IMG/VR virus record: IMGVR_UViG_3300036770_007539
Span: 186,001 to 250,000 of that record
Strand: one strand, 5' to 3'
Length of the DNA: 64,000 nt
The notes under the pieces are model-generated. The model did no database searches. It had not been told where the DNA came from and saw nothing but the letters and a program-made list of their open reading frames with translations. Both the position numbers and the translations under genes were made by a program. Below, in pieces: positions 10,203 to 25,837 of the stretch. Each line of letters starts with the position of its first letter. Position 1 is the first letter of the stretch.

Positions 10203-10746
10203 TACTACTAAGATGGATAGGTATCCTAAAATTTTTAATTTTTTATCTGAAAATTATCAAGACTCATTAAAAATTCTATCTTTTGGCTGCTCTTCGGGAG
10301 AAGAATGCTTCTCTTTGAGAAAATACTTTTTAAAATCTAAAATATTTGGGGTAGATGCTAATGATGAAATATTAAAAGAAGCCATTAAAAATAATAATGA
10401 CAATAATATTTATTTTGACAACAGCATAATGAACATTGAATCTGTTGATATGATTTTTGCAATGTCGGTATTTTGTAAGCATCCAGAATCATTTGATTTA
10501 TTAAAAAATACTGTTTATAATTTTAAAGATTATAATGAAGAAGTTAAAAAGCTAGATAGTAAATTAAATAAAAATGGTATTTTTATAAACTATAATTCAA
10601 ATTATTTTTTTTCAGATACCGACGTTTATTATAAATATTCTCCGATTTTGGGAGATTTTGAAAAGGAATTTGTTAAAAAATTTGATAAAAATAAAAATTA
10701 TTCAAATTTAGAATCACCCGTCATTTTTATAAAAAATAAAGTTTGA
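10171..10746 (+). CDS. Class I SAM-dependent methyltransferase (CheR-like motif I)
   Basis: ILSFGCSSGEE, FGVD. Confidence 0.75.
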   Translation: MRLLMIHQTHNTTKMDRYPKIFNFLSENYQDSLKILSFGCSSGEECFSLRKYFLKSKIFGVDANDEILKEAIKNNNDNNIYFDNSIMNIESVDMIFAMSVFCKHPESFDLLKNTVYNFKDYNEEVKKLDSKLNKNGIFINYNSNYFFSDTDVYYKYSPILGDFEKEFVKKFDKNKNYSNLESPVIFIKNKV

Positions 10747-10771
10747 TATAGGTAAATTTTATTGGAGACAT

Positions 10772-12666: not shown

Positions 12667-12674
12667 GGAATAAA

Positions 12675-13889
12675 ATGATTCAAGGATTTTATACTGGATG
12701 TATAAATTCAGGAAATATTGGAGACGATGTTTTATTTAATATTTTTTTAAATTTATTAAGCGAATGCATTGTTGATAAATATAAAGTTAATTGCTCAATA
12801 GATCAAAATCAATTATTTCTAAAAGATTCTTCTAAAGAATGGATGGAAAACTCTTCTATTGGTGTAGTTGGAGGAGGGTCAATTCTTCATCCAGAAGAAA
12901 TTTCTTATTCAGGTCCTATTAAAAACTATGAATCAAATATTAAAGCATCTTTATTATTTGGAACTGGAATATCAGATACGCCAAATTTTAAAATATCAGA
13001 AAGTGATAAGTTAAATATATTGTCCGGAAAGTATTTAAATTTAAATTTTCCAATAAATAAAATGATGAGTGAAAACATTTTAATTGCTAAAAATATAAAA
13101 TTTGGCGGGCTACGAGGACCATTAGACGTGGCTGTATGTAGAAGTTTTGATGAAACTTTTCGTAAGCCATGGATTTATGATCCGGGACTGTTATTTAATA
13201 GATATTATAATTTAAATTCTTTAAAAAATAAAAATTCTAATATTATTGGAATAAATATTGCCAACATATCTGGAGATAATAGAATTTCATTAAAAAATGA
13301 AAAATACATTGATTATATGAACAGGTTGGAGTCTGTTATTGTAGATGTATGTAATTTTTTAATTAATAAAAATTATAAAATATATTTTTACTCAATGTCC
13401 GATGGTGAAATGCATTTGCATAATACTATTATTAATAAACTGGATAAGAATTTAATAGGATCAAATATATTAACTCACAATAAACCTTTAAATTATGTTG
13501 AATTGGCTTTGTTATCTTCTACTTTTAAATTCGCCATAGCAACTAGACTGCACGCCAATATTTTATTAAATTCTAATTTAATTCCTACCATAAATTTAAT
13601 GTATAATATTAAAGCAAGTAATTATATGAAAAGTATAGAAATGCTTGAACTGGGGGTTCCAACAGATTCTAATATGAATTTAAATAATATAATTAATAAA
13701 TATAATTTTTTAATGCAAAATTACGATAATATTATTAAAACATTAAAGTTTAATGTTGAAAAAGCGTATACGTTGCACTATGATGAAATAATGAAATTAT
13801 TAGATGGTATTAATTTAAAAATAGAAAATGATGTAAATATACAATATCAGATATATAATAGTATATTAGGTTTTTTTAAAATTAATTAA
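12675..13889 (+). CDS. Polysaccharide pyruvyl transferase family protein
   Basis: GNIGDD, VGGGS, LRGP, DPG, TRLHANI. Confidence 0.82.
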   Translation: MIQGFYTGCINSGNIGDDVLFNIFLNLLSECIVDKYKVNCSIDQNQLFLKDSSKEWMENSSIGVVGGGSILHPEEISYSGPIKNYESNIKASLLFGTGISDTPNFKISESDKLNILSGKYLNLNFPINKMMSENILIAKNIKFGGLRGPLDVAVCRSFDETFRKPWIYDPGLLFNRYYNLNSLKNKNSNIIGINIANISGDNRISLKNEKYIDYMNRLESVIVDVCNFLINKNYKIYFYSMSDGEMHLHNTIINKLDKNLIGSNILTHNKPLNYVELALLSSTFKFAIATRLHANILLNSNLIPTINLMYNIKASNYMKSIEMLELGVPTDSNMNLNNIINKYNFLMQNYDNIIKTLKFNVEKAYTLHYDEIMKLLDGINLKIENDVNIQYQIYNSILGFFKIN

Positions 13890-13898
13890 AGGCAAAAA

Positions 13899-14531
13899 AT
13901 GAAAGAGTATAGTTTTGAAGGCGCACAAGATTGGCATCATTATTTTAAAATTATTTTTGATAATTTCAAAGTAAGAAATATGTTAGAGTTTGGTCTTGGC
14001 AATGGTACTGAATTTTTATTAGATCATTGTAACACCGTTACTTCTGTTGAAATTTCATTGGGCGATTATAACAAATCCTGGTATTCTATGTGTTTAAAAA
14101 AATATTCTCATTATAATAATTGGAATCCAATATATATTGAAGCTTGTGATGAAATTAGAGAAGCTAATGAAATCGCTCAAAAGAATAGATATCCGATATC
14201 ATATAATAAACATTTATCTAAATTAGAAGAAATTACAGATCTTGTTTTATCAGATCATGAATATGATGCTATTTTTGTTGATGCTGGAATTCATAATAGA
14301 GGCGATATTTTAAATTTAGTAATGGGCAAAGCTCCTATAATTGCAGCACATGATTCCTCTAGGGATGAAAATAGAATACTTAAAAATATATACGGATACA
14401 ATATTGTTCGAGTTCCGAGTGATTATTTAGAATTTCATTTTGAAGATACGTATATGGGTACTACGATTTGGGTTAAAAAAGATTTTAACAGCAATGTTAT
14501 TAGTTCTTTGTCAGGAAGATTAAACAAATGA
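13899..14531 (+). CDS. SAM-dependent methyltransferase
   Basis: MLEFGLGNGT, VTSVE, YDAIFVDA, AHD. Confidence 0.75.
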   Translation: MKEYSFEGAQDWHHYFKIIFDNFKVRNMLEFGLGNGTEFLLDHCNTVTSVEISLGDYNKSWYSMCLKKYSHYNNWNPIYIEACDEIREANEIAQKNRYPISYNKHLSKLEEITDLVLSDHEYDAIFVDAGIHNRGDILNLVMGKAPIIAAHDSSRDENRILKNIYGYNIVRVPSDYLEFHFEDTYMGTTIWVKKDFNSNVISSLSGRLNK

Positions 14532-15223
14532 AAATTTTAGATACTTATAAAAAGTATTTAGATCTTGGCACAAATGAAGGATTAAGATATAATGATGAGA
14601 GTAAATCTCGTTTTGTTTCTTTTAATATGTGCTTAGAGCGTCTTGCAAAATTAAGTGCCCCTAAAATATTGGAACTAGGGACTAGTCGTAGTTATGTTGA
14701 TGGAAAATTTCCAGGATGTAACTCTGATGATAAAAAATTTTGGAATAAAGATGACTTTTCAAAATGGGACTGGGGCGCAGGGTGTTTTACATTAATGTTT
14801 GGAATGCATCTTCCAAATGCAAAAATTACTACATTAGATTTAATTCCCAATCACATTAATAGATGCCAATATATGACCTCTTCTTTGGATCTTGATAACG
14901 TATCCCATGTTGTATCTGATTCAATAAGTTATTTAAACAGCACGAGTGAATCATATGATCTAATTTATTTAGATACAGGCGATATGCACCCAATAGAGCC
15001 AACTTGCCTTCTCCAGTTGGAAGAGGCTAAATCTATTGTTGGCAAAAAAATATTAAATGCTCAAGGTCTGCTTTTAATTGATGATGTATTAAATGGAACT
15101 CCAAGAGAGATGGGAGATCTATCAAATAGATATGGTAAGTCAGAATTAGCTTTGCCTTATTTATTAAATAATAATTATAAATTATTATTTGAAGGTTATC
15201 AATATATTTTAACGCAAGGATAA
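14528..15223 (+). CDS. SAM-dependent methyltransferase (Methyltransf_24-like)
   Basis: ILELGT, SDS, YDLIYLDT, LLLIDD. Confidence 0.78.
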   Translation: MKILDTYKKYLDLGTNEGLRYNDESKSRFVSFNMCLERLAKLSAPKILELGTSRSYVDGKFPGCNSDDKKFWNKDDFSKWDWGAGCFTLMFGMHLPNAKITTLDLIPNHINRCQYMTSSLDLDNVSHVVSDSISYLNSTSESYDLIYLDTGDMHPIEPTCLLQLEEAKSIVGKKILNAQGLLLIDDVLNGTPREMGDLSNRYGKSELALPYLLNNNYKLLFEGYQYILTQG

Positions 15224-15224
15224 A

Positions 15225-16133
15225 ATGAAAGTTTTAATTACAGGGGGAGCTGGTTTTATTGGAAGCCATCTTGCGGATAAATTATTAGAATTAAATCATG
15301 AAGTTTTTGTTCTTGATGATTTATCTTCTGGAGATTTAAATAATTTATCTGCAAGGTGTAAATTTTTTGAAGTTGAAATATGCGATAAAAATTCAATTTC
15401 AAAAGCTTTTGAAATAGTTAAACCAGATGCTGTTTATCATTTGGCAGCTCAAATTAACGTAAGAAAATCCATTACAGATCCTGTATCAGATGCAGAAATC
15501 AATACTATTGGAACATTGAATGTTTTAAGCGAATGCGTTAAGCATAAAGTTAATAAGATTATTTTTTCTTCTTCTGGTGGTGCTATTTATCAAGATGATA
15601 ATGATTTTCTTAAAACAGAAAATTCTGTAATTCAACCAGCTTCTCCTTATGGAATTTCTAAATGGACAGGTGAGCAGTATATTAAATTTTATAAAGAAAT
15701 TTACGGTCTAGACTATACAATATTAAGATTAAGTAATGTGTATGGTCCCAGACAAAATAGCAAGGGAGAGGCTGGAGTTATTTCTATTTTTATTAATAAT
15801 GTTAAAGGCAATAAGCCCTTAACTGTTTTTGGCACAGGTGAACAAATTAGAGATTATATTTACGTAGAAGATGTCGTTAATGCAATGGAGTTATCTTTAA
15901 GAGTTTCGGGCACATTTAACGTTTCTACTGGAAAAGAAACAAAAGTTAATCAGCTCGTTGATAAAATATGTTCAGAATTTAATTATGATACTGTACTGTA
16001 TGCTCCTAAAATTGAGGGCGAATTGTTTAGAAATTGTTTGTCTTCTAAACTGCTACAGTCTTATGGATGGCAAGTTCTACATGATATAGAATCTGGTCTT
16101 AATAAAACAATAAAATATTTTAAAAATAATTAA
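15225..16133 (+). CDS. NAD-dependent nucleotide-sugar epimerase (UDP-Glc/GlcNAc 4-epimerase-like)
   Basis: TGGAGFIG, HLAAQ, YGISK (YxxxK), NVYGPRQ, RDYIYVED. Confidence 0.9.
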   Translation: MKVLITGGAGFIGSHLADKLLELNHEVFVLDDLSSGDLNNLSARCKFFEVEICDKNSISKAFEIVKPDAVYHLAAQINVRKSITDPVSDAEINTIGTLNVLSECVKHKVNKIIFSSSGGAIYQDDNDFLKTENSVIQPASPYGISKWTGEQYIKFYKEIYGLDYTILRLSNVYGPRQNSKGEAGVISIFINNVKGNKPLTVFGTGEQIRDYIYVEDVVNAMELSLRVSGTFNVSTGKETKVNQLVDKICSEFNYDTVLYAPKIEGELFRNCLSSKLLQSYGWQVLHDIESGLNKTIKYFKNN

Positions 16134-16138
16134 AAATT

Positions 16139-17140
16139 ATGAAGAAAGTTTTAATTACTGGCGTAACAGGTCAAACAGGCTCTATTCTTGTTGAAAATTA
16201 TTTAAAACAAGGAGATTATGTTCACGGTATGATTAGAAGAAATTCTAATTTTAACACTAGAAGAATTGATCATGTATATAATCATCCCAATTTAAAATTA
16301 TTTTATGGTGATTTGGCAGATTATGGTTCTATTTGTTCAGCTGTATCCGATTTAAAGCCTGATTATTTTATTAATTGTGGGGCTCAGTCTTATGTCAAAG
16401 CTTCTTTTGATATTCCTGAATACACTTTTGATATTGATGCAACTGGAACTATTAGATGCCTTGAAGCAATTAGAAAGTTTAGTAAAAATACTAAGTTTTT
16501 ACAGTGCTCTACTTCTGAGTTATATGGTTCAACTCCACCTCCTCAAAGTGAAACTACATCGTTTCATCCACGCTCCCCTTATGGGGCAGCTAAAATTGCT
16601 GCTTACTGGGCAACTGTAAATTATAGAGAAGCATATAATATGTTTGCTGTAAACTCGATCTCGTTCAACCATGAAAACTCTAAAAGATCAGAGCACTTCG
16701 TTACTCGTAAAATTACCCGAGCAGCTACTAGAATTAAACTTGGTCTTCAAGATAAATTAACTCTTGGCAATCTCGAAGCTAAAAGAGATTGGTGTGATGC
16801 TCGTGATATTGCCCGTGGTCAAATGATGATGCTAGATTCTGATGTTCCAGATGATTATGTCTTGTGCTCTGGCAAGTCTCGTTCAGTAAAAGAATTTGCT
16901 GACATTGTTTTTTCTAAATTGGGTCTGAATTATCAAGATTATGTTGAAGTTTCAGATAAGCATTTTAGACCCTCAGAAGTAGATCATCTTTGCGGAGACT
17001 ATACAAAAATTAATAAAGCTTTAGGCTGGGAGCCTCTAATTTCTTTTGATCAAATGGTCGAGGAGATGATCGATCACGATCTCAAGCTTGCCCAACAAGA
17101 GCAGGTCTTAGCTCAAAACGGATTTAAATATACTCTATGA
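16139..17140 (+). CDS. gmd: GDP-mannose 4,6-dehydratase
   Basis: ITGVTGQTGS, AQSYVKASF, STSELYG, PRSPYGAAK, FNHE, FVTRKIT, RPSEVDHL. Confidence 0.95.
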   Translation: MKKVLITGVTGQTGSILVENYLKQGDYVHGMIRRNSNFNTRRIDHVYNHPNLKLFYGDLADYGSICSAVSDLKPDYFINCGAQSYVKASFDIPEYTFDIDATGTIRCLEAIRKFSKNTKFLQCSTSELYGSTPPPQSETTSFHPRSPYGAAKIAAYWATVNYREAYNMFAVNSISFNHENSKRSEHFVTRKITRAATRIKLGLQDKLTLGNLEAKRDWCDARDIARGQMMMLDSDVPDDYVLCSGKSRSVKEFADIVFSKLGLNYQDYVEVSDKHFRPSEVDHLCGDYTKINKALGWEPLISFDQMVEEMIDHDLKLAQQEQVLAQNGFKYTL

Positions 17141-18096
17141 AAGTTTTAGTTACAGGCGCAGCCGGATTTATTGGTGCTAATTTTATTAGGCGCTCTACTT
17201 ACCTAAAAGGTAAAGAACATCAATTTGTATCTATAGACAGTCTTTTATATCCTCATAGCAAAAGTAATTTCTATATCAGTAATGGAAAGTCTGATAGTTT
17301 TTATATGGCTGATATTGCTGATAAAAAGATTATTGATAATATTTTTGAAATTGAAAAACCTGATATTATCGTGCATTTCGCCGCAGAGTCTCATGTAGAT
17401 CATTCTATTGAAACGGCAGCGCCCTTTATACACTCTAATGTTTTGGGTACACAAACTTTAATTGATTGTGCCGTTAAACATAAGGTCAAAACTTTCTTTT
17501 ATATTTCTACGGATGAAGTGTATGGTCAGTTAAAATCTGAAAATGAAGAAGGTTGGGATGAATCCGCTTTCCCTAATCCTAGAAATCCATACTCTGCTTC
17601 TAAATTGTCCGGTGAGTTTTTAGTTAAAGCAGCTCACGAAACTCATAAACTTCAATATATTATTAGTCGATGCTCCAATAATTTTGGACCTAGACAATCC
17701 ACTAGGAACCTTATTCCAAAAGTTATAAAAAATATTGCAGAGGGCGTCGATGTTCCAATTTATGGTCAGGGTCAGCAAATGCGAGAGTGGATCTTTGTAG
17801 AAGACCACTGCGATGCCATCTGGCACATTATAGAGTCTAAACAATATAATCAAATCTATAATATTTCTACTGGCAATGAAATTACTAACCTAGAATTAGT
17901 TAATCATATTGCTAATATTATGGGCAGAGGTCATAATTTATTTAAATTTGTTCCTGATAGACCCGGACATGATTTTAGATACTCTTGCAAATCAGATAAA
18001 CTTCGAGCCTTGGGCTGGAAGCCAAGTGTAAAATTTACTAAGGCGCTAGAGTCTACCATATCATGGTATGACAATAATAGGTGGTTTTTTAAATGA
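17137..18096 (+). CDS. rmlB: dTDP-glucose 4,6-dehydratase
   Basis: HFAAESHVDHSI, STDEVYG, PYSASK, RCSNNFGP, DRPGHDFRY. Confidence 0.95.
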   Translation: MKVLVTGAAGFIGANFIRRSTYLKGKEHQFVSIDSLLYPHSKSNFYISNGKSDSFYMADIADKKIIDNIFEIEKPDIIVHFAAESHVDHSIETAAPFIHSNVLGTQTLIDCAVKHKVKTFFYISTDEVYGQLKSENEEGWDESAFPNPRNPYSASKLSGEFLVKAAHETHKLQYIISRCSNNFGPRQSTRNLIPKVIKNIAEGVDVPIYGQGQQMREWIFVEDHCDAIWHIIESKQYNQIYNISTGNEITNLELVNHIANIMGRGHNLFKFVPDRPGHDFRYSCKSDKLRALGWKPSVKFTKALESTISWYDNNRWFFK

Positions 18097-18668
18097 TAAA
18101 ATATGTCTTTACTAAAGAAGAAGTAGATGCCTGTAAACTTTTCTCTGAGGCAGTAGATACTTCACATTATTCTAAACGTGGACAAAACAATGATCAGAAA
18201 AGGCAAAAGGATGCCTTGATTGGCAAGCTTGGAGAGGTTGCCACGTATCATTCTTTAAAAGATAAAATACATGGTCTTACAATTCCAGATTTTAAAATTT
18301 ATTCAGCAAAAGAAAAATCTTGGGACTTTGATTTAAAAGGTCAAGAAGTAAATGTTCATGTTAAAACTCAAGATGTAGAACAGGGAGAAAAGTATGGAGT
18401 TAGCTGGATTTTCCAATATGGAAATGGAAAAAATCAGCATTATGACAAAGAAATATTTGACAAATTAACGCCCAATCAATATGTTGTCTTTGTGTCTTTG
18501 TCATTAAAAGACAACCTTGCAATAATAAGAGCTATCTTAAAACTAGAATTTCTTCATGAAAGAAAATTATTTGGGCTACCCAAATTAGAATTTTTGCAAA
18601 AAGAAAATAAAAAAGCAGTTTATTTAAAAGATATCGAGAGATATTCTGACCAATTATTTCAATTATAA
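18093..18668 (+). CDS. Hypothetical protein, possible PD-(D/E)xK nuclease fold
   Basis: GKLGE helix, then D..L and HVK spacing typical of restriction-endonuclease-like folds. Confidence 0.35.
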   Translation: MIKYVFTKEEVDACKLFSEAVDTSHYSKRGQNNDQKRQKDALIGKLGEVATYHSLKDKIHGLTIPDFKIYSAKEKSWDFDLKGQEVNVHVKTQDVEQGEKYGVSWIFQYGNGKNQHYDKEIFDKLTPNQYVVFVSLSLKDNLAIIRAILKLEFLHERKLFGLPKLEFLQKENKKAVYLKDIERYSDQLFQL

Positions 18669-18690
18669 GATATAATAACCTAAGGATTAT

Positions 18691-20010
18691 ATGATTAAAA
18701 CCGAAGAAAAGCAAATTGAAAAACCCACAGTTGTTGATGATCTTGATAAAGATACACTCAGCGCTTTAAAAGCAAAACTCGCTAAAAAGGAAGAGTCAAC
18801 TATGTCACCTAAAATTGTAGCACCTAAAAAACGAAGTATTAACCTTGGCGTTGTAGGAACGGGTCAAGGCGGATCTAGATTAGCAGAAGCATTTTATGCC
18901 CTTGGATATAACGCTATTGTTATGAATACCGCTCCACAAGATCTGGAGCACATCGACGTTCCAGAAGCTAATAAACTTCTTTTGCAGTTTGGTCTTGGCG
19001 GAGCCGCAAAAGAATTAGAAATTGGAAAAGAAGCAGCAGAGACTCACCGAGACGCTATTCATCTCTTGGTTCAAGAAAAGCTTGAAGACGCTCAGGCTTT
19101 TGTACTTTGTCTTTCTTTGGGCGGTGGTTCAGGTGCGGGCTCATGCGAAACCGTGATTGATGTCTTGGCATCTGTCGGTAAGCCAATGGTCGTCATTTCT
19201 GTTTTGCCAATGACAAATGATGATGCGCAAACTAAACACAATGCATTAGAAACATTAAGCAAATTGGCAAAACTAGTTCAATCTAAAAAAGTTCAATCTA
19301 TGGTTGTTGTTGACAATGCAAAAATTGAAACTATTTATAGCGATGTTTCTCAGCTTGACTTTTTCTCAGTGGCTAACAAAGCAATTGTTGAACCTATTGA
19401 GCAGTTCAATTTCCTTTCTTCTCAAGCATCTCCTTCTAAAGCCTTAGACTCCACAGAATGGGCAAAACTTTTAATCGATGGCGAAGGCTTAACAGTATTT
19501 GGATCCCTTACAGTTGATAATTATCAAGACGAAACTGCCATTGCAGAAGCCGTAGTTACCAACTTAGATCATAACTTGCTTGCGGGAGGTTTCGATCTTA
19601 AACATTCAAAATATGCTGGATTTATTGTTGCTGCCAATAAAGAAGTTTGGAGTAAAATTCCAAGCTCAGCAGTAAACTATGCAAGGGCATTAATCCAAGA
19701 ACATGCAGGGACTCCGAAGGCACTATTTCATGGAATATATGTTACCGATGATAAAGAAGATAGTGTTAAAATTTATTCTTGTTTTACCGGCTTATCTCTT
19801 CCAATGAGTCGAGTGGATACTCTTAAAAAAGAGGCAATGGAATTAATGAATCAAGCTAAATCAAAAGATACAACTCGTTCTCTTAGCTTATCATTAGATA
19901 CTGGTGCAAATGAAACTGTTTCAGCTGCCCAGAAGGTGAAAGATAAAATTGCAGCTAAATCTTCTGCCTTTGGCAAATTCATGGGCTCAGTTGTAGATAA
20001 AAGAAAGTGA
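18691..20010 (+). CDS. Tubulin/FtsZ-superfamily GTPase (PhuZ/TubZ-like)
   Basis: GTGQGG (T1), NT, LGGGSGAG (T4 signature), VLP, VDN, ALDSTE (T7-like loop). Confidence 0.9.
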   Translation: MIKTEEKQIEKPTVVDDLDKDTLSALKAKLAKKEESTMSPKIVAPKKRSINLGVVGTGQGGSRLAEAFYALGYNAIVMNTAPQDLEHIDVPEANKLLLQFGLGGAAKELEIGKEAAETHRDAIHLLVQEKLEDAQAFVLCLSLGGGSGAGSCETVIDVLASVGKPMVVISVLPMTNDDAQTKHNALETLSKLAKLVQSKKVQSMVVVDNAKIETIYSDVSQLDFFSVANKAIVEPIEQFNFLSSQASPSKALDSTEWAKLLIDGEGLTVFGSLTVDNYQDETAIAEAVVTNLDHNLLAGGFDLKHSKYAGFIVAANKEVWSKIPSSAVNYARALIQEHAGTPKALFHGIYVTDDKEDSVKIYSCFTGLSLPMSRVDTLKKEAMELMNQAKSKDTTRSLSLSLDTGANETVSAAQKVKDKIAAKSSAFGKFMGSVVDKRK

Positions 20011-20021
20011 TTTAATTTTAA

Positions 20022-20070
20022 ACAAAAAAAGGAAAAGAGCGGGTAGATCTCGCTCTTTTCCTTTTTTTGT
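20022..20070. terminator. Bidirectional intrinsic terminator
   Basis: Perfect 20-bp inverted repeat acaaaaaaaggaaaagagcg / cgctcttttcctttttttgt with A and T tracts, directly after the tubulin gene. Confidence 0.92.
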
Positions 20071-20129: not shown

Positions 20130-21593
20130 ATGAATAAAATTGAAATTTTAGATAATAAAAAAGTTAAAATATTCTTTGATGATTCGGATGATTTTGAAAA
20201 ATTTAAAAATCATTTATCATTTAAAATTGCTGGGGTAGAATATACGAAAGCTTATAAAGCTGGAAATTGGGATGGCATTACATACATGGTAAATGCTAAA
20301 AAAGAATTTCCTATCGGATTGTTAGATAGAGCTAAAAATTATTTAAAAAATAATAAAATAGACTATTCTATTCAAGATAATAGAGCCCCAATTAAAAACT
20401 CCAATTCACTTGACATTTCTAATAGATTAAAAGAATTAGAAATGCCACCAAGAGACTATCAAATTAGAGCGTCTGAGATTATAGATAAATCAAACTTTGG
20501 TATAATAAGAGCGGCAACTGGCGCCGGTAAGACTTTGATAGCCGCCTTAATTGCTGCAAGAATTAATAAGCCAACAATTATATATGTTATTGGTCTTGAT
20601 TTGTTAAATCAATTCTTTGATTTCTTTTCAAAAGTTTTTGATGAGGAAATTGGATATATTGGAAATGGAACTTGCAATATTAAAAGAATTAATATTGCAA
20701 GTGTATGGACTATAGGAAAAGCTTTAGATATACAATTAGATGATTTAACTTTTGATGACGAAATTGACGAGGAAAAATTTCAAGAAAGTAATAAGTACAA
20801 AATTATTTCGCTTTTAAAAGATACCAAGGTTCACTTATTAGATGAGTGCCACGTTGCTACAGCTACAACAATTAGATCTATTCATAAAGTTATTGAGCCA
20901 GAATATTTTTACGGCTTAAGCGGAACTCCATTTAGAGAAGATAATTCTGATCTGCTAATCGAAGGCATTTTAGGACCTAAATTAATAGATATTTCAGCTT
21001 CAGAACTAATTGACAAAGGTGTGCTGGCTCAGCCTATAATTAAATTTATTGAAGTTCCAAAAGAAAAAATATCAGGACCTTATCAGACTATTTATAAAAA
21101 TTATATTATTGAAAATCATATTAGAAATAATTTAATTTTAGAAAATACTTTGAAATTAATTGAAAAAGGATATAAAGTTTTGGTTCTATTTAAAAATATT
21201 AAGCATGGAAAAATTTTATCTAATATTTTTAAAAATAATAATATTAAATATAAAATTCTATCTGGAAATGACTCGCTAGATAAAAGAGAAGATGTTAAAA
21301 AGGCTATTTATAATGGCGAGATAGATGTAATTTTAGCATCAACTATTTTTGACATTGGAGTTGACATAAAGTGTTTGTCTGCGTTAGTTTTAGCTGGCGG
21401 TGGAAAGAGCTATGTTAAAGCTTTACAAAGGATTGGTCGAGTAATACGATCCTATCCTGGAAAAAAATTTGCTGCCATAGTAGATTTCTATGACGATATT
21501 AAATATTTAAAAGCACATTCCACTGAAAGGTGCAAGATTTACATGACTGAAGATGGTTTTAAAGTTATTCCAGCTCCAGGAATGAAAGTATGA
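20130..21593 (+). CDS. Superfamily 2 DNA helicase (UvsW-like)
   Basis: RDYQ, ATGAGKT, LDECH, SGTP, QRIGR. Confidence 0.92.
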   Translation: MNKIEILDNKKVKIFFDDSDDFEKFKNHLSFKIAGVEYTKAYKAGNWDGITYMVNAKKEFPIGLLDRAKNYLKNNKIDYSIQDNRAPIKNSNSLDISNRLKELEMPPRDYQIRASEIIDKSNFGIIRAATGAGKTLIAALIAARINKPTIIYVIGLDLLNQFFDFFSKVFDEEIGYIGNGTCNIKRINIASVWTIGKALDIQLDDLTFDDEIDEEKFQESNKYKIISLLKDTKVHLLDECHVATATTIRSIHKVIEPEYFYGLSGTPFREDNSDLLIEGILGPKLIDISASELIDKGVLAQPIIKFIEVPKEKISGPYQTIYKNYIIENHIRNNLILENTLKLIEKGYKVLVLFKNIKHGKILSNIFKNNNIKYKILSGNDSLDKREDVKKAIYNGEIDVILASTIFDIGVDIKCLSALVLAGGGKSYVKALQRIGRVIRSYPGKKFAAIVDFYDDIKYLKAHSTERCKIYMTEDGFKVIPAPGMKV

Positions 21594-21602
21594 GGAGGAC
21601 CC

Positions 21603-22190
21603 ATGGTAGAAGTTACAGCCGTTAATCTTGGTAAAAGATGGGAAACATTTTTTAAAAAATTATCATTGCATGATTCTACATCTGTAGAAAAATGGAAAGA
21701 ATATCAGATTCTGGGATATTTAATTTCAAGATTAGAAAGATACCTTCAAAGAAAATTCGCATTCACACTCTCTGGGCAGCCATCAAAATGTCCGGAGATG
21801 TTTTTTATAAAAAAAATTATTTATTCTTTAGATACCAAAGACCCTGAGGCAATTAAAAATTACATAGACTGGGTTTTTGATACTAAAATCATTCCAAGCA
21901 AAGTTAAACTTAGAAGCGTTGGATACTTTCATAGCTCTGTCTTTGCAAATCAATTCTTGGATGAAGTTAAAAAATCCAAACAAATTACTAGAACGACTCC
22001 AATTCCAGAAGAATACAGGGTAATTGTTAATTTTTTCAAAGCCCCAGTAGAAACATTTGGAGATCTTGCCTTTGTAAAAAAAGTCATAGAATCTAATCCA
22101 GAAGATGAAGACTCTCAGCAATTTAAAAAAATGTTTATTAACCTAATTTCAATAGGGTTCAAGGAAGAGTGCCTAAAGGACCTGAAATGA
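21603..22190 (+). CDS. Hypothetical protein in replication module
   Basis: GAGGA RBS; lies between helicase and helicase-loader genes. Confidence 0.6.
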   Translation: MVEVTAVNLGKRWETFFKKLSLHDSTSVEKWKEYQILGYLISRLERYLQRKFAFTLSGQPSKCPEMFFIKKIIYSLDTKDPEAIKNYIDWVFDTKIIPSKVKLRSVGYFHSSVFANQFLDEVKKSKQITRTTPIPEEYRVIVNFFKAPVETFGDLAFVKKVIESNPEDEDSQQFKKMFINLISIGFKEECLKDLK

Positions 22191-22675
22191 ATAAGGGAGA
22201 TAAAGTTAAAGTATTTTTAACAAACTCTTTATCTGCAGAAGGCACAGTTGATTCTTATAATGAATTGGAGCTTATACTGGTTTCCAATGGTTACAAATTA
22301 GTCATTAATAATCCTTATAAAAATATAATAATGTATTATGTTTTTTCAAACCCTCAAGTAAATTCAGAATTTTCTGATTTGATTAAAAAATCAGTTGAAT
22401 CAGAAAAAAATATTAGCAATCAAGAGCTGCCAAGAGACCTTGATTTAAGAATTAAAAAATTAGTTGAATTAAAAAGTATGTCGGCAGAAGCTCAGCGAGA
22501 ACAAATTAGAAAAGAGCTTACAACTTTCCATTCTGTTAACACCGAACAAATATTAGGAAAATATGGAACTCCCAGTTTTATCAGCCCTCAGCACAGTGCC
22601 TCAAAAGAAATTAATGATGGAAATGCAGATGACGTTGGAGGCTTGTCCTCAATGCCAAGGCAAGCCCCTCAATAA
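22187..22675 (+). CDS. Hypothetical protein with N-terminal Hfq/Sm-like motif
   Basis: KVKVFLTNSLSAEGTVDSYNELELIL...YKNII parallels Hfq [25 protein letters not shown]...YKHAI; AAGGA RBS. Confidence 0.45.
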   Translation: MNKGDKVKVFLTNSLSAEGTVDSYNELELILVSNGYKLVINNPYKNIIMYYVFSNPQVNSEFSDLIKKSVESEKNISNQELPRDLDLRIKKLVELKSMSAEAQREQIRKELTTFHSVNTEQILGKYGTPSFISPQHSASKEINDGNADDVGGLSSMPRQAPQ

Positions 22676-23282
22676 AGCTTGCCAAGACTGCAATACTTTA
22701 AATACTATTCTTCAAAGGTTTGCAAATGCCAATATCCCTGTCAGATATTGGCGATTAAAAATGTCAGAGTTCTTAGGTCCAACAGCCTTAAAAAAACTTT
22801 ACGATGATACTTCTTCAGACCTTGATAAGTCTTATAGGTCTGGAATATCATTTTGTTTAACTGGCACTCACGGGGTGGGTAAGACCATGACCGTAACTAG
22901 TATTTTAAGATCTGCCCTTGCGAAAGGCTACAGTGGTCTTTATACTACCTTGAATCAAATTGTGTTGAGTCTAACGTCTCATACTGATGAATCTAGAATC
23001 GACATAAGAAAAGCATACACATTAGTTGATTTTTTAGTTATTGATGAGTTTGATCCTAGGCATATGGGCTCGGACAATGCCTCAGATTTGTTTGGAAGAA
23101 TATTAGAAGATATTTTTAGAACTAGGGTTCAAAATAATTTGCCGACTTTGATGTGTACCAATTCTCCAAACGTTCAAGAGTCTTTTCAAGGTTCAATTAA
23201 GACTAGCATTTCCAGCCTGATGAGTTATGTAAAAGAAATTCCAGTAATTGGAAAGGATTTACGTAAGGAAAAGAAATTATGA
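22563..23282 (+). CDS. DnaC/DnaI/IstB-like AAA+ helicase loader
   Basis: CxxC...CxxC, ANIP, Walker A GTHGVGKT, Walker B LVIDE, R...LPTLMCTN, GKDLR. Confidence 0.88.
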   Translation: MELPVLSALSTVPQKKLMMEMQMTLEACPQCQGKPLNKACQDCNTLNTILQRFANANIPVRYWRLKMSEFLGPTALKKLYDDTSSDLDKSYRSGISFCLTGTHGVGKTMTVTSILRSALAKGYSGLYTTLNQIVLSLTSHTDESRIDIRKAYTLVDFLVIDEFDPRHMGSDNASDLFGRILEDIFRTRVQNNLPTLMCTNSPNVQESFQGSIKTSISSLMSYVKEIPVIGKDLRKEKKL

Positions 23283-24703
23283 GTGATAATTTTAATTATT
23301 TGGTAGATGATCAAGACCTAAGAATTATAAAAAATATTTTAGAGGACAAGTCATCTGCAAATGAATTCGTCAAATCTTTTGACGAAAGTATTTTTATTGG
23401 ATCTAGCAAGAAATTAATGAAAGATGTAATATCTTATATTGATTGCTATAAGAGCCCACCTACTAAACGAGTCTTATTAGAGAATATTGAAAATGATACA
23501 TCATTATATAATGAATATTCTTATATTTTTTCTTGCCTGGATAATGTTGAGGCAAATCCTAATGAATTCAAATATGATTTAGACAAGATTTGTTCTAGAT
23601 TTAAAGAACATACTACTTTAAATTTTAAAAAATCAGTACAATCCTTAAAAGATCTTGATAGCATCCAAGAAGCTACCAGAAATTACAATAAAGAAATAGA
23701 AAAAGCTTCTTATAAAAAACAATCCCATGTTCAGAAGCCAATTTCTAGGTTCCTTGATGACTTTAAACGTGATTATAATAATAAATTTCATAATAAAGAC
23801 CAGTCCCAAGGAATTTTAACTCAGTATAAATATTTAGATTATATTACGAATGGGTTACAGCCAGCTGAAATGGTCATTATCGGAGGAGAGACTGGAGCTG
23901 GTAAATCTCAATTGTTAAACAACCTTGCAATCCAGCTATGGATGCAAAACAATACTATAGACGACAGAGGTGCTTTTAAAAAGGGTTATAATGTTTTATA
24001 TTTCTCTTTAGAAATGCCATACAAGCAATGCTTTAACAGAACAGTGTCTAGAATTTCTCAATTAGAGCTTTATGGTATTCGAGATGCTACTTTAGCACCT
24101 TCTGAGGTTGAAAAACTATATAAAGCTTGTGAATTTATTGAATCTTACCCTTATCAATTTGAAATTGTTGATATTCCGCGTGGAGTTACAGTAGAAGATG
24201 TCGAGGAAAGATATTTAGAAGCAAAATCGAAGTTCAATCCAGATATTATTGTAGTTGATTATCTTGGGCTTCTAGAAGATAAAGATGCGCCAGGTGATGA
24301 TTGGTTGAAACTAGGTCACATTGCTGGGAAGCTTCATGAAATGTCTCGTGTATATGGATGTGCAATGCTAACAGCCGTTCAATTAAATAGATTGGCTAAA
24401 AATTCTGATAATAGAATTGGATTGCATCGATTTGGAAGATCTAGTCTTATCGCCACTCACGCTACGTTATGTTTACAAATTGAAACAAGACCTGATGAAA
24501 ATCAGTTTGGTGATATGGTAGTTCATATCATTAAAAATAGAAACGGAGCGTTGGGTCATTTTTCTTTGCAGAGAGATTTTTCACGATCTTTACTTTTGGA
24601 CTATGATGAAGTATTCTTGCCTTCTGGCAAAGAGCCTAAAATGCTTATGCCTTCTGATGTTGCCGATGTTTCTAAACTATTAGAGAAATATAGTTGGATT
24701 TAA
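23279..24703 (+). CDS. dnaB: DnaB-like replicative helicase
   Basis: GETGAGKS, FSLEM, IVVDYL, QLNR, KNRNG. Confidence 0.92.
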   Translation: MSDNFNYLVDDQDLRIIKNILEDKSSANEFVKSFDESIFIGSSKKLMKDVISYIDCYKSPPTKRVLLENIENDTSLYNEYSYIFSCLDNVEANPNEFKYDLDKICSRFKEHTTLNFKKSVQSLKDLDSIQEATRNYNKEIEKASYKKQSHVQKPISRFLDDFKRDYNNKFHNKDQSQGILTQYKYLDYITNGLQPAEMVIIGGETGAGKSQLLNNLAIQLWMQNNTIDDRGAFKKGYNVLYFSLEMPYKQCFNRTVSRISQLELYGIRDATLAPSEVEKLYKACEFIESYPYQFEIVDIPRGVTVEDVEERYLEAKSKFNPDIIVVDYLGLLEDKDAPGDDWLKLGHIAGKLHEMSRVYGCAMLTAVQLNRLAKNSDNRIGLHRFGRSSLIATHATLCLQIETRPDENQFGDMVVHIIKNRNGALGHFSLQRDFSRSLLLDYDEVFLPSGKEPKMLMPSDVADVSKLLEKYSWI

Positions 24704-24901: not shown

Positions 24902-25192
24902 ATGCCTACATACGAACATCTTTGTCAAAGCTGCAGTCACGAATGGGAAGAATTTTATAGTATTAAATCAGACCCTCCAACAGTATGTCCCAGCTGTAAG
25001 ACTGAAGGAACTGTAAAAAGATTAATTTCTGGAGGTTCAGGTAAAGGAAAAGTAGAGCTAACGGGTCATGAATATAAAGAAAAAGTCATGTCGGATGCTA
25101 ACGCTTTAAAGAGAGAAGCTTATAGAAATGAAAATGTAATGGCAAATTTAGTCGGGGAAAGTAAATATCATCGAAATCAAAGCAGTAGGTGA
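24902..25192 (+). CDS. FmdB-family zinc-ribbon protein
   Basis: MPTYEHLCQSC...CPSC...KRLIS. Confidence 0.88.
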   Translation: MPTYEHLCQSCSHEWEEFYSIKSDPPTVCPSCKTEGTVKRLISGGSGKGKVELTGHEYKEKVMSDANALKREAYRNENVMANLVGESKYHRNQSSR

Positions 25193-25195
25193 TGT

Positions 25196-25837
25196 ATGAA
25201 CTTTACACAAGAACAGCTTGAACAAATGGCAATAGACTATCTTGACATTCAAGACAATATAAAAAAAACTCAAAATTCTTCTGAGCTTAGGAAGTTTAAA
25301 TCTCAACAAGAGCAAATTATTAAAAATTTAAAATGTTTGGTTAATATCAGATCTTTTAAGTATAAAAAATTTTCTAATTTTCCAGATTTAGAACAAGAAG
25401 GTTTAGAGGCTTTAGTTATGGCGCTTAATACTTTCAAGCCAAATAGATCTTCTTTTACTTGGTGGGCAGATAAATATATAAGCACTAGGCTTTCCCGAGC
25501 AGCAAATGCTCACTCTACCGTAAGAGTTCCTATTAAACATGCCAGGGAATTTAAACCTTTAAAATCTTCTGTGATTCCATTAATTGTTGATGAGAGAAAT
25601 GGTCACTCTGAGTTAGAAATAAAAGATGTTGAAAAGAGGGTAAATGAAGCTATAAATAAGCTTCCGGAGATGAATAAAAAATTTATTTCTATGTTGTACG
25701 GTCTTAATGGAATAAGACAATATAATATTACTCAGTTGTGTGAAAAGTTTTCTTTAAACAAGTCAGAGTCATTAAAGTTAATTAATGATTCTAAAAGGAA
25801 ACTAAAAAATATTTTGGAAACATATGAAGAAGTTTAA
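25196..25837 (+). CDS. Sigma-70 family RNA polymerase sigma factor
   Basis: Region 2 DLEQEGLEALVMALNTFKP..FTWWA; region 4-like C-terminal HTH. Confidence 0.85.
   Translation: MNFTQEQLEQMAIDYLDIQDNIKKTQNSSELRKFKSQQEQIIKNLKCLVNIRSFKYKKFSNFPDLEQEGLEALVMALNTFKPNRSSFTWWADKYISTRLSRAANAHSTVRVPIKHAREFKPLKSSVIPLIVDERNGHSELEIKDVEKRVNEAINKLPEMNKKFISMLYGLNGIRQYNITQLCEKFSLNKSESLKLINDSKRKLKNILETYEEV

What the first reader, a model, noticed from the sequence alone, without database searches (positions are those of the whole stretch)
18691..20010. Tubulin/FtsZ-family protein with long terminal extensions at the head of the replication block
Seen: GTPase signatures (GQGG, GGGSGAG) in a 439-aa protein with a charged ~45-aa N-terminal extension and a C-terminal coiled coil ending in a basic amphipathic segment (SAFGKFMGSVVDKRK). 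It has its own upstream motif and a strong terminator. Known: PhuZ spindles position DNA in nucleus-forming jumbo phages; TubZ partitions plasmids and prophages. Inference: a distinct phage cytoskeletal lineage, possibly membrane-tethered. No TubR, centromere repeats or chimallin were recognised in this window.
Basis: partly seen in the sequence, partly recalled or inferred. Interest (0 to 1): 0.62.

Follow-up and report, generated by a model that had tools for sequence, protein, structure and literature searches.

The report
TubZ-like tubulin of uncultured megaphages
The gene encodes a real tubulin-type GTPase, closest to the plasmid-partition tubulin TubZ, that is fixed next to the replication genes of an abundant group of uncultured phages with genomes of about 350-470 kb that show no detectable 'phage nucleus' shell, so it probably builds a filament of a kind not yet studied in phages.

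Summary
Window 18691-20010 (+) encodes a 439-aa tubulin/FtsZ-superfamily protein with intact T1 (GTGQGG) and T4 (GGGSGAG) loops, a ~50-aa N-terminal extension, a long C-terminal helix and a basic flexible tail, followed by a strong terminator.

It is not a host FtsZ and not a PhuZ. Pfam, profile searches and structure comparison all put it nearest TubZ/RepX: VIA-align Z is 40 for TubZ and 30-32 for FtsZ, and PhuZ is absent from the top 50. In a tree it forms its own well-supported clade.

The family holds more than 1,000 sequences and is almost entirely viral. It occurs once per genome and sits upstream of a UvsW-like helicase in 65 of 66 helicase-anchored loci.

Five relatives rated complete (428-473 kb) lack chimallin (phiKZ control positive). 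Ten large relatives lack integrase and ParB. No TubR or centromere repeats were found.

Two terminal motifs, N 'DD…KLxxLKxK' and C '[ST]xF[GSN][KR]Φ…DRRK', are as conserved as the core. The tail could bind membrane, but it also resembles true TubZ tails, so it is best read as a docking peptide whose partner is unknown.

Verdict: a new variant of a known kind; function is inferred, not shown. Side finding: inteins sit in the T1 and T4 loops of relatives.

The parts
18691..20010 (+). Tubulin/TubZ-like GTPase gene, 439 aa (P0001)
   Evidence: ORF. Pfam Tubulin E 2.2e-17 and TubZ-like_C E 1e-7, both above their cut-offs. AF2 model pLDDT 83. TubZ is the top structural match.
18682..18686 (+). Shine-Dalgarno-like AAGGA, 4 nt before the ATG. 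A TATAAT lies at 18671-18676, just after the stop of the upstream ORF.
   Evidence: Read from the sequence. The TATAAT-containing 13-mer is not a recurring exact motif.
18691..18840 (+). N-terminal extension (residues 1-50): acidic start, predicted helix 20-36, basic linker
   Evidence: AF2 model: pLDDT 41-66, helix 20-36. Charges.
18736..18777 (+). Conserved N-terminal motif, residues 16-29 (DD…KLxxLKxK)
   Evidence: Mean top-residue frequency is 0.70 for residues 21-30, against 0.39-0.41 in the flanking blocks, across 42 non-redundant homologs. D16 and L26 are invariant or nearly so.
18850..19338 (+). GTPase domain (residues 54-216) with T1 loop G56-G61 (18856-18873), T4 signature G144-G150 (19120-19140) and T7-region acidic residues D208…E213 (19312-19329)
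   Evidence: Pfam PF00091. G58, G61, G145, G146, G148, D208, N209 and E213 are invariant in 41 sequences. D208-N-A-K aligns with the RepX 'IDNAKL'.
19405..19803 (+). TubZ-like C-terminal domain (residues 239-371)
   Evidence: Pfam PF22453, 32.5 bits against a cut-off of 26. pLDDT is mostly 85-95.
19804..19890 (+).
   Evidence: DSSP helix 372-400. VIA-align to TubZ-Bt covers model 43-411 and to TubZ-Bc covers 46-392.
19891..20007 (+). Flexible basic tail (residues 401-439) with the conserved terminal motif …VSAAQKvKdKIAaKSSAFGKΦ……D[KR]RK (residues about 410-439, nt 19918-20007)
   Evidence: pLDDT 48-56. Conservation 0.67-0.68, equal to the core. S425 is invariant; K392, R396 and R438 are nearly so. 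The motif is kept down to about 35% identity. Hydrophobic moment 0.41, charge +4.
20022..20070 (+). Intrinsic terminator: perfect 20-nt inverted repeat with a 9-nt loop, then a T-run
   Evidence: I7; -32.3 kcal/mol, z -6.8.
17137..18096 (+). Conserved upstream neighbour: NAD-dependent epimerase/dehydratase, the last of three tandem paralogs at 15225-18096
   Evidence: Pfam. Present near the tubulin in 58 of 60 related loci and is the gene at position -1 in 39 of 61.
18093..18668 (+). 191-aa ORF inserted between epimerase and tubulin; not part of the conserved unit
   Evidence: Found in 1 of 60 related loci. No Pfam or PHROG hit. Atlas lead to T4 endonuclease IV family, score 0.95.
20130..24703 (+). 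Conserved downstream replication block: UvsW-like SF2 helicase (20130-21593), 195-aa gp59-like lead (21603-22190), 168-aa ORF, IstB-like AAA+ loader (22563-23282), DnaB-type helicase (23279-24703)
   Evidence: Pfam. Atlas lead. Present in 51-60 of 60 loci. The tubulin lies 0-4.3 kb upstream of the helicase in 65 of 66 helicase-anchored loci.

Best explanation
The gene encodes a GTP-dependent, filament-forming tubulin homolog of the TubZ type. It has become a fixed, single-copy gene of a large clade of uncultured phages with genomes of about 350-470 kb.

**Shown**
- Superfamily membership, with all nucleotide-binding loops intact and under strong conservation.
- A TubZ-like two-domain fold with the long terminal helix.
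- A separate clade from TubZ/RepX, PhuZ and FtsZ.
- Strict synteny at the boundary between a glycan-biosynthesis block and the UvsW/loader/DnaB replication block.
- No detectable chimallin, integrase, ParB, TubR or iterons.

**Inferred**
- The protein polymerises head-to-tail. The T7-region residues D208/E213 of one subunit would complete the GTPase site of the next, giving dynamic (treadmilling) filaments during lytic infection.
- The flexible linker (about 401-410) presents the conserved basic peptide (KSSAFGKΦ…DRRK) as a docking motif that couples the filament to a cargo or anchor. The tails of TubZ (TubR-DNA), FtsZ (FtsA/ZipA) and tubulin do the same.
- The conserved N-terminal helix is a second docking or bundling element.

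**Most likely job.** To position or move something large in the infected cell, such as replicating phage DNA or assembling particles, without a chimallin shell.

**What the tail binds** (a phage adaptor on DNA, the membrane directly, or a host protein) is not known.
For: **Family and fold**
- Pfam Tubulin 64 bits and TubZ-like_C 32.5 bits, both above their cut-offs.
- Family profile against PDB sequences: RepX 8e-39, TubZ-Bt 4e-26, M. jannaschii FtsZ 7e-25.
- hhalign: phage G gp138 3.5e-35, Bacillales plasmid TubZ-likes 1e-29 to 1e-30, RepX 5e-26, TubZ-Bt 2.5e-21, E. coli FtsZ 5e-13, PhuZ 1e-7.
- AF2 model pLDDT 83. Foldseek: TubZ-Bt TM 0.71/0.78.
- VIA-align: TubZ-Bc Z 40.5, TubZ-Bt 39.6, FtsZ 30-32.

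**Activity-relevant residues.** 26 columns are invariant, including the T1, T4 and T7 residues.

**Own clade.** SH-aLRT 98-99.

**Abundance**
- 1,112 hits among the scored candidates, on contigs up to 492 kb.
- 1,725 cluster representatives at 50% identity with E up to 0.001, of which 131 are below 1e-30.

**Fixed gene**
- One copy in each of 10 large relatives.
- Present in 65 of 66 helicase-anchored loci.
- Inteins sit in its T1 and T4 loops in relatives. By general knowledge, inteins favour conserved active-site loops of functionally important proteins.

**Tail as docking motif**
- It is as conserved as the core although predicted disordered.
- True TubZ tails carry similar basic F-containing peptides: pBtoxis 'KNSAFKR…NPFKKR' and RepX 'KLNFG…KKKLSF'.

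**Lytic setting without a nucleus**
- No chimallin in the window's own genome or in five complete relatives, with phiKZ as positive control.
- No phiKZ-type RNAP subunit, with 201phi2-1 as control.
- No integrase or ParB in ten relatives.
Against: - No biochemical or expression evidence exists.
- The role is argued by analogy only. No partner, cargo or centromere was identified.
- Gene position is ambiguous. The tubulin is as tightly packed with the upstream envelope-glycan genes (median gap 12 nt) as with whatever follows (median gap 1 nt). In this window a terminator separates it from the replication genes.
- The chimallin test uses one Pfam model built on phiKZ-like proteins, so a very divergent shell protein would be missed.
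- The tree has a single FtsZ and no CetZ or eukaryotic tubulin. It was built by the quick method, and the named references sit on long branches.
- CetZ scores nearly as high as TubZ structurally (Z 35-38).
Confidence: 0.6

Rival explanations
1. Membrane-tethered filament. The C-terminal amphipathic basic peptide inserts directly into the inner membrane like a MinD/FtsA targeting helix. The filament would act at the envelope, for example to scaffold or redirect cell-wall or glycan synthesis, or to interfere with host division and cell size to make room for a very large virion.
For: - Residues 412-431 have hydrophobic moment 0.41, mean hydrophobicity 0.15-0.34 and charge +2 to +4, with a HeliQuest-type D up to 1.7.
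- Hydrophobic positions recur at i, i+3/4 (V416, I420, F427, F430/M431, V434).
- The gene abuts an envelope-glycan block: an epimerase sits directly upstream in most loci.
- A GH25 muramidase gene lies next to the tubulin in 15 of 60 loci and overlaps its stop codon in the three loci.
- One relative is annotated as a GT1 glycosyltransferase-tubulin fusion (P0147).
Against: - Helix confidence in the tail is low (pLDDT about 50-55) and the segment is glycine-rich in most homologs (…FGKLVGGVVDRRK).
- The D score is driven mostly by charge.
- Equally basic F-containing tails occur in TubZ proteins, whose partner is a DNA-bound adaptor.
- GH25 adjacency is a minority state, and the genes between tubulin and helicase are a variable insertion spot.
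- The GT1 fusion may be a gene-call artefact (not checked).
Confidence: 0.25
2. Classical TubZRC-type partition system. The filament segregates the phage genome as a low-copy plasmid-like prophage (pseudolysogeny). A TubR-like adaptor and centromere would be encoded elsewhere in the genome.
For: - The nearest characterised relatives are the partition/replication proteins RepX and TubZ.
- The tail resembles TubZ tails.
- IMG/VR labels 4 of 10 large relatives 'provirus'.
- Known TubRs are too weakly conserved to be ruled out by sequence.
Against: - No small winged-helix gene is conserved next to the tubulin. The neighbours are an epimerase and a helicase.
- There are no iteron arrays within 12 kb and no tandem repeats near the gene.
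- tblastn with three TubRs and TubY finds nothing better than E 0.09.
- No integrase or ParB is found in ten relatives, eight of them at least 92% complete.
- Genomes of 430-470 kb with a full replication apparatus and terminal repeats in one case look like virulent megaphages.
Confidence: 0.12
3. PhuZ-like spindle that centres or rotates a phage nucleus built from a shell protein too divergent to be recognised.
For: - It is a jumbo-phage tubulin.
- The held literature links phage tubulins with nucleus formation (PMC7824862, PMC9123017, PMC10299810).
- The chimallin model used is phiKZ-centred.
Against: - PhuZ is the most distant of all references (hhalign 1e-7; BFVD PhuZ models TMq 0.46-0.56; none in the VIA top 50).
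- The tail is basic, whereas the 201phi2-1 PhuZ tail is acidic (net -4) and both PhuZ tails end in acidic Asp-rich stretches.
- No chimallin is found in five complete relatives, with a positive control.
- No phiKZ-type RNAP subunit is found.
- A sigma-70-like gene sits in the replication block (weak hit). That would fit use of the host RNA polymerase.
Confidence: 0.05

Closest known systems
TubZ / RepX of Bacillus plasmids pBtoxis and pXO1 (type III partition, TubZRC)
   Same: - Best match by sequence profile (RepX 8e-39; hhalign 5e-26) and by structure (Z 40.5 and 39.6).
- Pfam TubZ-like C domain.
- Long terminal helix followed by a flexible tail carrying a basic F-containing peptide.
- Encoded by a mobile element next to replication functions.
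   Different: - Only 19-24% identity, and a separate clade.
- No adjacent TubR, no iterons, no lysogeny or plasmid markers.
- An extra conserved N-terminal motif.
- Host element is a phage of about 450 kb, with an apparently lytic setting.
Bacillus phage G gp138 and 'tubulin-like domain' proteins of Bacillales plasmids (Brevibacillus, Pontibacillus)
   Same: - Closest named sequences (hhalign 3.5e-35 to 5e-29).
- Phage G gp138 is the only GenBank phage hit (23.5% identity).
- Phage G is also a megaphage without chimallin.
   Different: - In the tree they fall in the unresolved group that also holds RepX and TubZ-Bt, not with the window's clade.
- They are shorter (359-448 aa), with different tails and no N-terminal motif.
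- The function of phage G gp138 is unknown, and it was not detected proteomically (PMC12484599).
PhuZ of nucleus-forming Chimalliviridae (phiKZ gp039, 201phi2-1 gp59)
   Same: A phage-encoded tubulin of a jumbo phage. Presumably it positions large structures during lytic infection.
   Different: - Most distant reference.
- In PhuZ an acidic tail mediates filament contacts, whereas here the tail is basic.
- No chimallin or phiKZ-type RNAP is detected.
TubZ of Clostridium phage c-st (TubZRC plus TubY, plasmid prophage)
   Same: A phage-borne TubZ-type protein, structurally similar (Z 33).
   Different: - c-st has adjacent TubR and TubY and is a plasmid prophage.
- Its tail is acidic (net -8).
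- hhalign gives only 1.3e-16.
FtsZ and archaeal CetZ
   Same: Same superfamily fold (Z 30-32 and 35-38), with a flexible linker and a short conserved C-terminal docking peptide in FtsZ.
   Different: - No FtsZ_C Pfam domain.
- About 19-23% identity.
- Not cellular: one 1-kb MAG fragment among the genomes of 185,579 species.
- The terminal peptide lacks the D-I-P-x-F-L-R-K pattern seen in E. coli FtsZ.

Membership tests
Tubulin/FtsZ superfamily | GTPase domain with T1 (GxGxxG) and T4 (GGGTG[ST]G-type) nucleotide-binding loops | tested here: met
   PF00091 at 64 bits against a cut-off of 33. GTGQGG at 56-61 and GGGSGAG at 144-150, with glycines invariant in 41 homologs.
Tubulin/FtsZ superfamily | Two-domain fold with a core helix linking the GTPase and C-terminal domains | tested here: met
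   AF2 model with pLDDT above 85 over residues 50-400. At least 500 PDB matches at E up to 0.001; every listed row is TubZ, CetZ or FtsZ. Z 30-40.
Tubulin/FtsZ superfamily | T7-loop acidic residues that activate GTP hydrolysis in the neighbouring subunit | tested here: inconclusive
   D208, N209 and E213 are invariant, and D208 aligns with the RepX 'IDNAKL'. The catalytic role is inferred, not assayed.
Tubulin/FtsZ superfamily | GTP-dependent polymerisation | not testable with these tools
   The self-association prediction gave no verdict. This needs biochemistry.
TubZ (type III partition tubulin) | TubZ-like C-terminal domain and long terminal helix | tested here: met
   PF22453 at 32.5 bits against a cut-off of 26. 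Helix 372-400 aligns with TubZ-Bt and TubZ-Bc.
TubZ (type III partition tubulin) | Flexible C-terminal tail that docks the adaptor TubR | tested here: inconclusive
   A flexible basic tail with a conserved peptide is present and resembles pBtoxis and pXO1 tails. No partner was identified.
TubZ (type III partition tubulin) | Operon with a small DNA-binding adaptor (TubR) and a centromere of iterons (tubC) | tested here: not met
   The neighbours are an epimerase and a helicase in 58-60 of 60 loci. No iterons or tandem repeats lie nearby. TubR and TubY tblastn gives E of 0.09 or worse. Caveat: TubRs are poorly conserved and have no dedicated Pfam model.
TubZ (type III partition tubulin) | Carried by a plasmid or plasmid-like prophage that needs partition | tested here: not met
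   No integrase and no ParB in ten large relatives. One relative has direct terminal repeats. The absence of hits is not proof.
TubZ (type III partition tubulin) | Groups with characterised TubZ/RepX in a phylogeny | tested here: inconclusive
   It forms a separate, supported clade. Deeper branching among TubZ, RepX, PhuZ and this clade is unresolved, with long branches.
PhuZ (nucleus-forming phage tubulin) | Sequence and structure closest to PhuZ | tested here: not met
   hhalign 1e-7 against 5e-26 for RepX. PHROG PhuZ gives only a partial hit at 4e-7. BFVD PhuZ models score TMq 0.46-0.56.
PhuZ (nucleus-forming phage tubulin) | Acidic C-terminal tail that inserts into the neighbouring subunit | tested here: not met
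   The tail at 401-439 has net charge +4. The 201phi2-1 PhuZ tail is net -4, and both PhuZ tails end in acidic D-rich stretches.
PhuZ (nucleus-forming phage tubulin) | Co-occurs with chimallin | tested here: not met
   PF25677 is absent from the window's own 301 kb and from five complete relatives. The phiKZ control scores 1121 bits.
PhuZ (nucleus-forming phage tubulin) | Co-occurs with phiKZ-type multisubunit RNA polymerases | tested here: not met
   phiKZ gp055 finds 201phi2-1 at 1.6e-185 but nothing in G000-G005. The sensitivity of a single-sequence search is limited. The PF00623 test is void because it misses phiKZ itself.
FtsZ (cell-division tubulin) | FtsZ_C domain, cellular gene, conserved C-terminal peptide of the D-I-P-x-F-L-R-K type | tested here: not met
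   No FtsZ_C hit at E up to 1. The family is viral. The terminal peptide is KSSAFGKF…DKRK, against E. coli DIPAFLRKQAD.

The most novel reading that the evidence does not exclude
This would be a third functional class of phage tubulin. It is a core gene of a globally abundant clade of virulent megaphages of about 450 kb. It would organise the infected cell (replication factory, giant capsids or the envelope) without a chimallin nucleus and without a TubR/centromere. It would do so through two clade-specific docking peptides (N-terminal KLxxLKxK helix, C-terminal SxFGKΦ…RRK), one of which tethers the filament directly to the membrane or to a host division protein.
Probability: 0.3. Interest if true: 0.78.

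Novelty: new variant of a known kind. Interest (0 to 1): 0.58.

Why it matters
- Two phage and plasmid tubulin systems are understood: TubZRC partition, and the PhuZ spindle of nucleus-forming phages. The reviews and comparative papers I could read tie phage tubulins to the phiKZ-like shell/RNAP group (PMC7824862, PMC9123017, PMC13282480).
- Here is a very large family, conserved in position, found in the biggest class of phage genomes. It fits neither system: it has a TubZ-like body but no adaptor, no centromere, no lysogeny markers and no shell.
- If it is a cytomotive filament used in lytic infection, cytoskeleton-based organisation of the infected cell is more widespread among huge phages than the Chimalliviridae.
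- The conserved tail peptides give a direct experimental handle, through pull-down, liposome binding and truncation.
- The inteins in the two nucleotide-binding loops are a further sign of strong functional constraint. They may be the first noted in this superfamily, but I could not establish that.

Tried and rejected
1. **Complex prediction** (two copies plus GTP): score 0.00, 'no answer'. This is not evidence either way.
No reads were laid, so there is no expression evidence.
3. **RNAP beta-prime Pfam PF00623** as a test for msRNAP. I rejected it after it failed to detect phiKZ's own polymerase and replaced it with a phiKZ gp055 query.
4. **T4 gp23 capsid Pfam**: no hit, so it did not help place the clade.
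5. **Genome-contig scan.** Alignment A1 was too diverse. A2 found only a 1-kb MAG fragment, so there is no host hint.
6. **The listing of cluster members** gave no accessions or organisms.
7. **Megablast** of the region against GenBank phages found no match.
8. **tblastn with TubR/TubY** and **Pfam of known TubRs** gave no usable adaptor model.
9. **Genome-wide upstream 8-mer enrichment** found no phage promoter motif.
10. **The two neighbours of unknown function as adaptor candidates.**
   - The 195-aa ORF looks gp59-like.
   - The 191-aa ORF looks T4 endonuclease-IV-like and is present in only 1 of 60 loci.
   - Both were rejected as TubR candidates.
11. **Resemblance of the tail to the FtsZ C-terminal peptide** (host FtsA/ZipA mimicry). 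It was considered from memory only. The shared feature is little more than 'F plus basic residues'. The host is unknown, so it was not tested and is not claimed.
12. **GH25 muramidase as an operon partner.** Rejected as a general feature, because it is present in only 15 of 60 loci.
Full report
**1. The observation**

Window 18691-20010 (+) is an open frame of 439 codons. Its product matches two Pfam domains above their curated cut-offs:
- the Tubulin/FtsZ GTPase domain (residues 54-216, E 2.2e-17)
- the TubZ-like C-terminal domain (residues 239-371, E 1e-7)

GQGG is part of the T1 loop (G56-G61) and GGGSGAG is the T4 tubulin signature (G144-G150).

In an alignment of 41 homologs at 36-72% identity, 26 columns are invariant. 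They include the T1 and T4 glycines and D208, N209 and E213 in the T7 region.

The AlphaFold2 model is confident over the core (mean pLDDT 83; mostly above 85 from residue 50 to 400). It shows:
- the first strand at residue 52, so the N-terminal extension is about 50 residues, with a helix at 20-36
- one long helix at 372-400
- a low-confidence tail at 401-439

It superposes on the terminal helix of TubZ (VIA-align model ranges 43-411 for TubZ-Bt and 46-392 for TubZ-Bc).

The terminator is genuine. It is a perfect 20-nt inverted repeat at 20022-20070, with -32.3 kcal/mol and z -6.8.

The 'own upstream motif' is weak:
- The gap to the upstream ORF is 22 nt.
- There is an AAGGA 4 nt before the ATG and a TATAAT at 18671-18676.
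- The motif does not recur exactly.
- No upstream 8-mer is enriched genome-wide.

**2. What genome this is**

The window is bases 186001-250000 of a 301,007-bp IMG/VR virus record, estimated 71% complete. It has no nucleotide match in GenBank phages. The only protein-level hit there is Bacillus phage G gp138 at 23.5% identity.

The protein family is large in metagenomes:
- 1,112 hits among the scored candidates, most at 60-66% identity and about 452 aa, on contigs up to 492 kb
- 1,725 cluster representatives at 50% identity with E up to 0.001 in the exhaustive search, 131 of them below 1e-30

IMG/VR holds many related contigs. Five are rated 100% complete at 428-473 kb, one of them with direct terminal repeats.

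A pattern scan over the genomes of 185,579 prokaryote species found only a 1-kb fragment in one MAG. As far as the patterns used can tell, the family is viral.

**3. Which tubulin**

Every line of comparison ranks TubZ-type proteins first and PhuZ last.

| Reference | phmmer, P0001 vs PDB | Family profile vs PDB | hhalign with A1 | VIA-align Z |
|---|---|---|---|---|
| Phage G gp138 | – | – | 3.5e-35 | – |
| Brevibacillus plasmid tubulin-like | – | – | 1.4e-30 | – |
| Pontibacillus plasmid tubulin-like | – | – | 5e-29 | – |
| RepX / TubZ-Bc (4ei7) | 1.9e-17 | 8e-39 | 4.9e-26 | 40.5 |
| TubZ-Bt (pBtoxis) | 3e-7 | 4e-26 | 2.5e-21 | 39.6 |
| CetZ | – | – | – | 35-38 |
| c-st phage TubZ | – | 4e-22 | 1.3e-16 | 33 |
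| FtsZ | 7e-10 | 7e-25 (M. jannaschii) | 4.8e-13 (E. coli) | 30-32 |
| PhuZ | – | – | about 1e-7 | none in top 50 entries |

Further structural results:
- Foldseek against PDB ranks TubZ-Bt first (TM 0.71 by query, 0.78 by target).
- In BFVD the best hit is an unnamed 'FtsZ' of an uncultured Caudovirales phage (59% identity). PhuZ models reach only TMq 0.46-0.56.

I built a maximum-likelihood tree of 63 sequences: family members, more distant representatives and nine named references. The window protein falls in a 12-row clade (SH-aLRT 99) inside a 19-row clade (98). That clade is separate from RepX, TubZ-Bt, phage G gp138 and the plasmid proteins, from PhuZ plus c-st TubZ, and from E. coli FtsZ.

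Limits of the tree:
- it used the quick search
- it has one FtsZ and no CetZ or eukaryotic tubulin
- the named references sit on long branches
- the deep order of clades is unresolved

No FtsZ_C domain is found at E up to 1.

**4. Context**

In 60 related loci the order is conserved:
- NAD-epimerase/dehydratase (58 of 60)
- tubulin
- UvsW-like helicase (60 of 60)
- a 195-aa protein (51 of 60; atlas lead to the T4 gp59 loader)
- IstB-like AAA+ loader (57 of 60)
- DnaB-type helicase (56 of 60)
- small proteins and a weak sigma-70-like protein

To avoid circularity I also collected loci through the helicase. Of 66 loci with at least 5 kb upstream, 65 carry the tubulin 0-4.3 kb upstream. Ten large relatives each have exactly one tubulin gene.

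The space between tubulin and helicase is variable. A GH25 muramidase sits next to the tubulin in 15 of 60 loci. In this window there are no genes in that space, only the terminator.

The 191-aa ORF just upstream (18093-18668) occurs in 1 of 60 loci and looks like a T4 endonuclease-IV-type insert.

Genes are tightly packed on both sides of the tubulin in the relatives: median gap 12 nt upstream and 1 nt downstream. 'Head of the replication block' and 'tail of the glycan block' are therefore equally fair descriptions.

**5. Accessories of the known systems**

*Chimallin*
- The Pfam model PF25677 finds phiKZ gp054 at 1121 bits.
- It finds nothing in the window's own genome, in five complete relatives or in phage G.

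*phiKZ-type RNA polymerase*
- The generic beta-prime model is useless for this question, because it misses phiKZ itself.
- phiKZ gp055 as query finds 201phi2-1 at 1.6e-185 and nothing in G000-G005.

*TubR, TubY and centromere*
- tblastn gives nothing better than E 0.09.
- No iterons or tandem arrays lie near the gene.
- Known TubRs have no dedicated Pfam model, so they cannot be excluded elsewhere in the genome.

*Lysogeny and partition*
- No tyrosine integrase and no ParB were found in ten relatives.

**6. The extensions**

Both carry short motifs that are as conserved as the catalytic core, while their flanks are not. The measure is the mean frequency of the commonest residue per column.

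| Segment | Mean top-residue frequency |
|---|---|
| Residues 21-30 (N motif) | 0.70 |
| N-terminal flanks | about 0.40 |
| Residues 411-430 (C motif) | 0.67-0.68 |
| Residues 381-390 | 0.42 |

The C-terminal motif ([ST]-x-F-[GSN]-[KR]-hydrophobic, then a polybasic end) persists to about 35% identity, including in intein-bearing members. Still more distant relatives have acidic tails.

The tail is amphipathic and basic: hydrophobic moment 0.41, charge up to +4, D up to 1.7. The globular core has net charge -16.

The tails of true TubZ proteins contain similar peptides:
- pBtoxis TubZ: 'KNSAFKR…NPFKKR'
- RepX: 'KLNFG…KKKLSF'
- the Brevibacillus protein: 'NPFKRK'

From my own knowledge of the TubZRC literature, not checked here, the TubZ tail is the element that binds the TubR-DNA complex. 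The safest reading is that the tail is a docking peptide on a flexible linker. Its partner is unknown.

**7. Mechanism**

I commit to a GTP-driven, TubZ-like cytomotive filament used during lytic infection. It would be coupled through its terminal peptides to a cargo or anchor, most likely to position replicating DNA or assembling particles (confidence 0.6 for the overall statement). Of that statement:
- the family assignment and the distinct lineage are well supported
- polymerisation is likely
- the cellular role is inference

Rivals:
- direct membrane tethering with an envelope or division role (0.25)
- true TubZRC partition with an unrecognised adaptor (0.12)
- a PhuZ-like spindle with an unrecognised shell (0.05)

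**8. Novelty**

The papers I could read link phage tubulins either to nucleus-forming phages or to TubZ partition (PMC7824862, PMC10299810, PMC9123017, PMC13282480, PMC7162821). Phage G's homolog is noted but uncharacterised (PMC12484599). I found no description of this clade, although absence from the held library is not proof. I rate it a new variant of a known kind.

**9. Not done**

- The complex prediction gave no verdict.
- No host was identified.

Noticed in passing
L044:8357-11134 (+) and L054:8312-11131 (+); also proteins P0169, P0170, P0176, P0188, P0211, P0236, P0237, P0259: Inteins interrupt the tubulin gene of relatives at two different nucleotide-binding loops.
- T1 loop: an insert of about 470 aa sits between G61 and S62 (GxGQAG|CIDGNT…FTHN|SRLAESF) in two close relatives.
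- T4 signature: an intein with a LAGLIDADG homing endonuclease sits at GGG|SGAG (about residue 146/147) in many distant members.
- A paper search for TubZ plus intein found nothing relevant.
   Followed up: partly
protein P0147 (812 aa): A relative at 41% identity is annotated as one protein with an N-terminal GT1 glycosyltransferase domain fused to the tubulin. It may be a real fusion or a gene-call or frameshift artefact, given that glycosyltransferase genes lie upstream in this clade.
   Followed up: no
window 4091-15223 (+): A run of about ten genes is absent from nearly all 60 related loci. It includes glycosyltransferases (an 896-aa multi-domain one at 5837-8527) and a weak pyruvyl-transferase hit at 12675-13889. 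It looks like a lineage-specific expansion of the surface-glycan island. Three tandem paralogous NAD-epimerase/dehydratase genes follow at 15225-18096 (D1).
   Followed up: partly
window 32582-36511 (+): A 1,309-aa ORF has no Pfam or PHROG match. It lies in the most GC-rich and most GC-skewed part of the window (GC 0.39-0.41, skew up to 0.28). It was not found within the 10-kb flanks of the related loci, whose reach mostly stops short of it.
   Followed up: no
window 2-1489 (+): The ORF running off the window start carries a type I dockerin domain (E 1.1e-8). This is unusual in a phage protein and could hint at the host or at cell-surface attachment. Homologs are present in 33 of 60 related loci.
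   Followed up: no
window 18093-18668 (+): The 191-aa ORF inserted directly upstream of the tubulin occurs in only 1 of 60 relatives. It resembles the T4 endonuclease IV family by language-model features (0.95, 208 of 256 features). It is probably a mobile nuclease gene at an insertion hot spot.
   Followed up: partly
window 25196-25837 (+) and 24902-25192 (+): A weak sigma-70 region-2-like protein (E 0.009) is conserved in 38 of 60 loci. A 96-aa protein kept at 52% identity in 43 of 60 loci has a relative in L002 that is a Zn-ribbon protein. Both close the replication block. A phage sigma factor would fit use of the host RNA polymerase.
   Followed up: no
window about 49900 onward: The coding strand switches from + to - near 49.9 kb, and the sign of the GC skew changes with it. 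A perfect TCTTCC x 6.8 tandem repeat lies at 54162-54202.
   Followed up: no
L165 (IMGVR_UViG_3300043411_000910): This is the only one of 66 helicase-anchored loci without a tubulin within 10 kb upstream. Its helicase match starts at residue 135, as in L141 and L166, which suggests an insert or split in the helicase gene itself.
   Followed up: no
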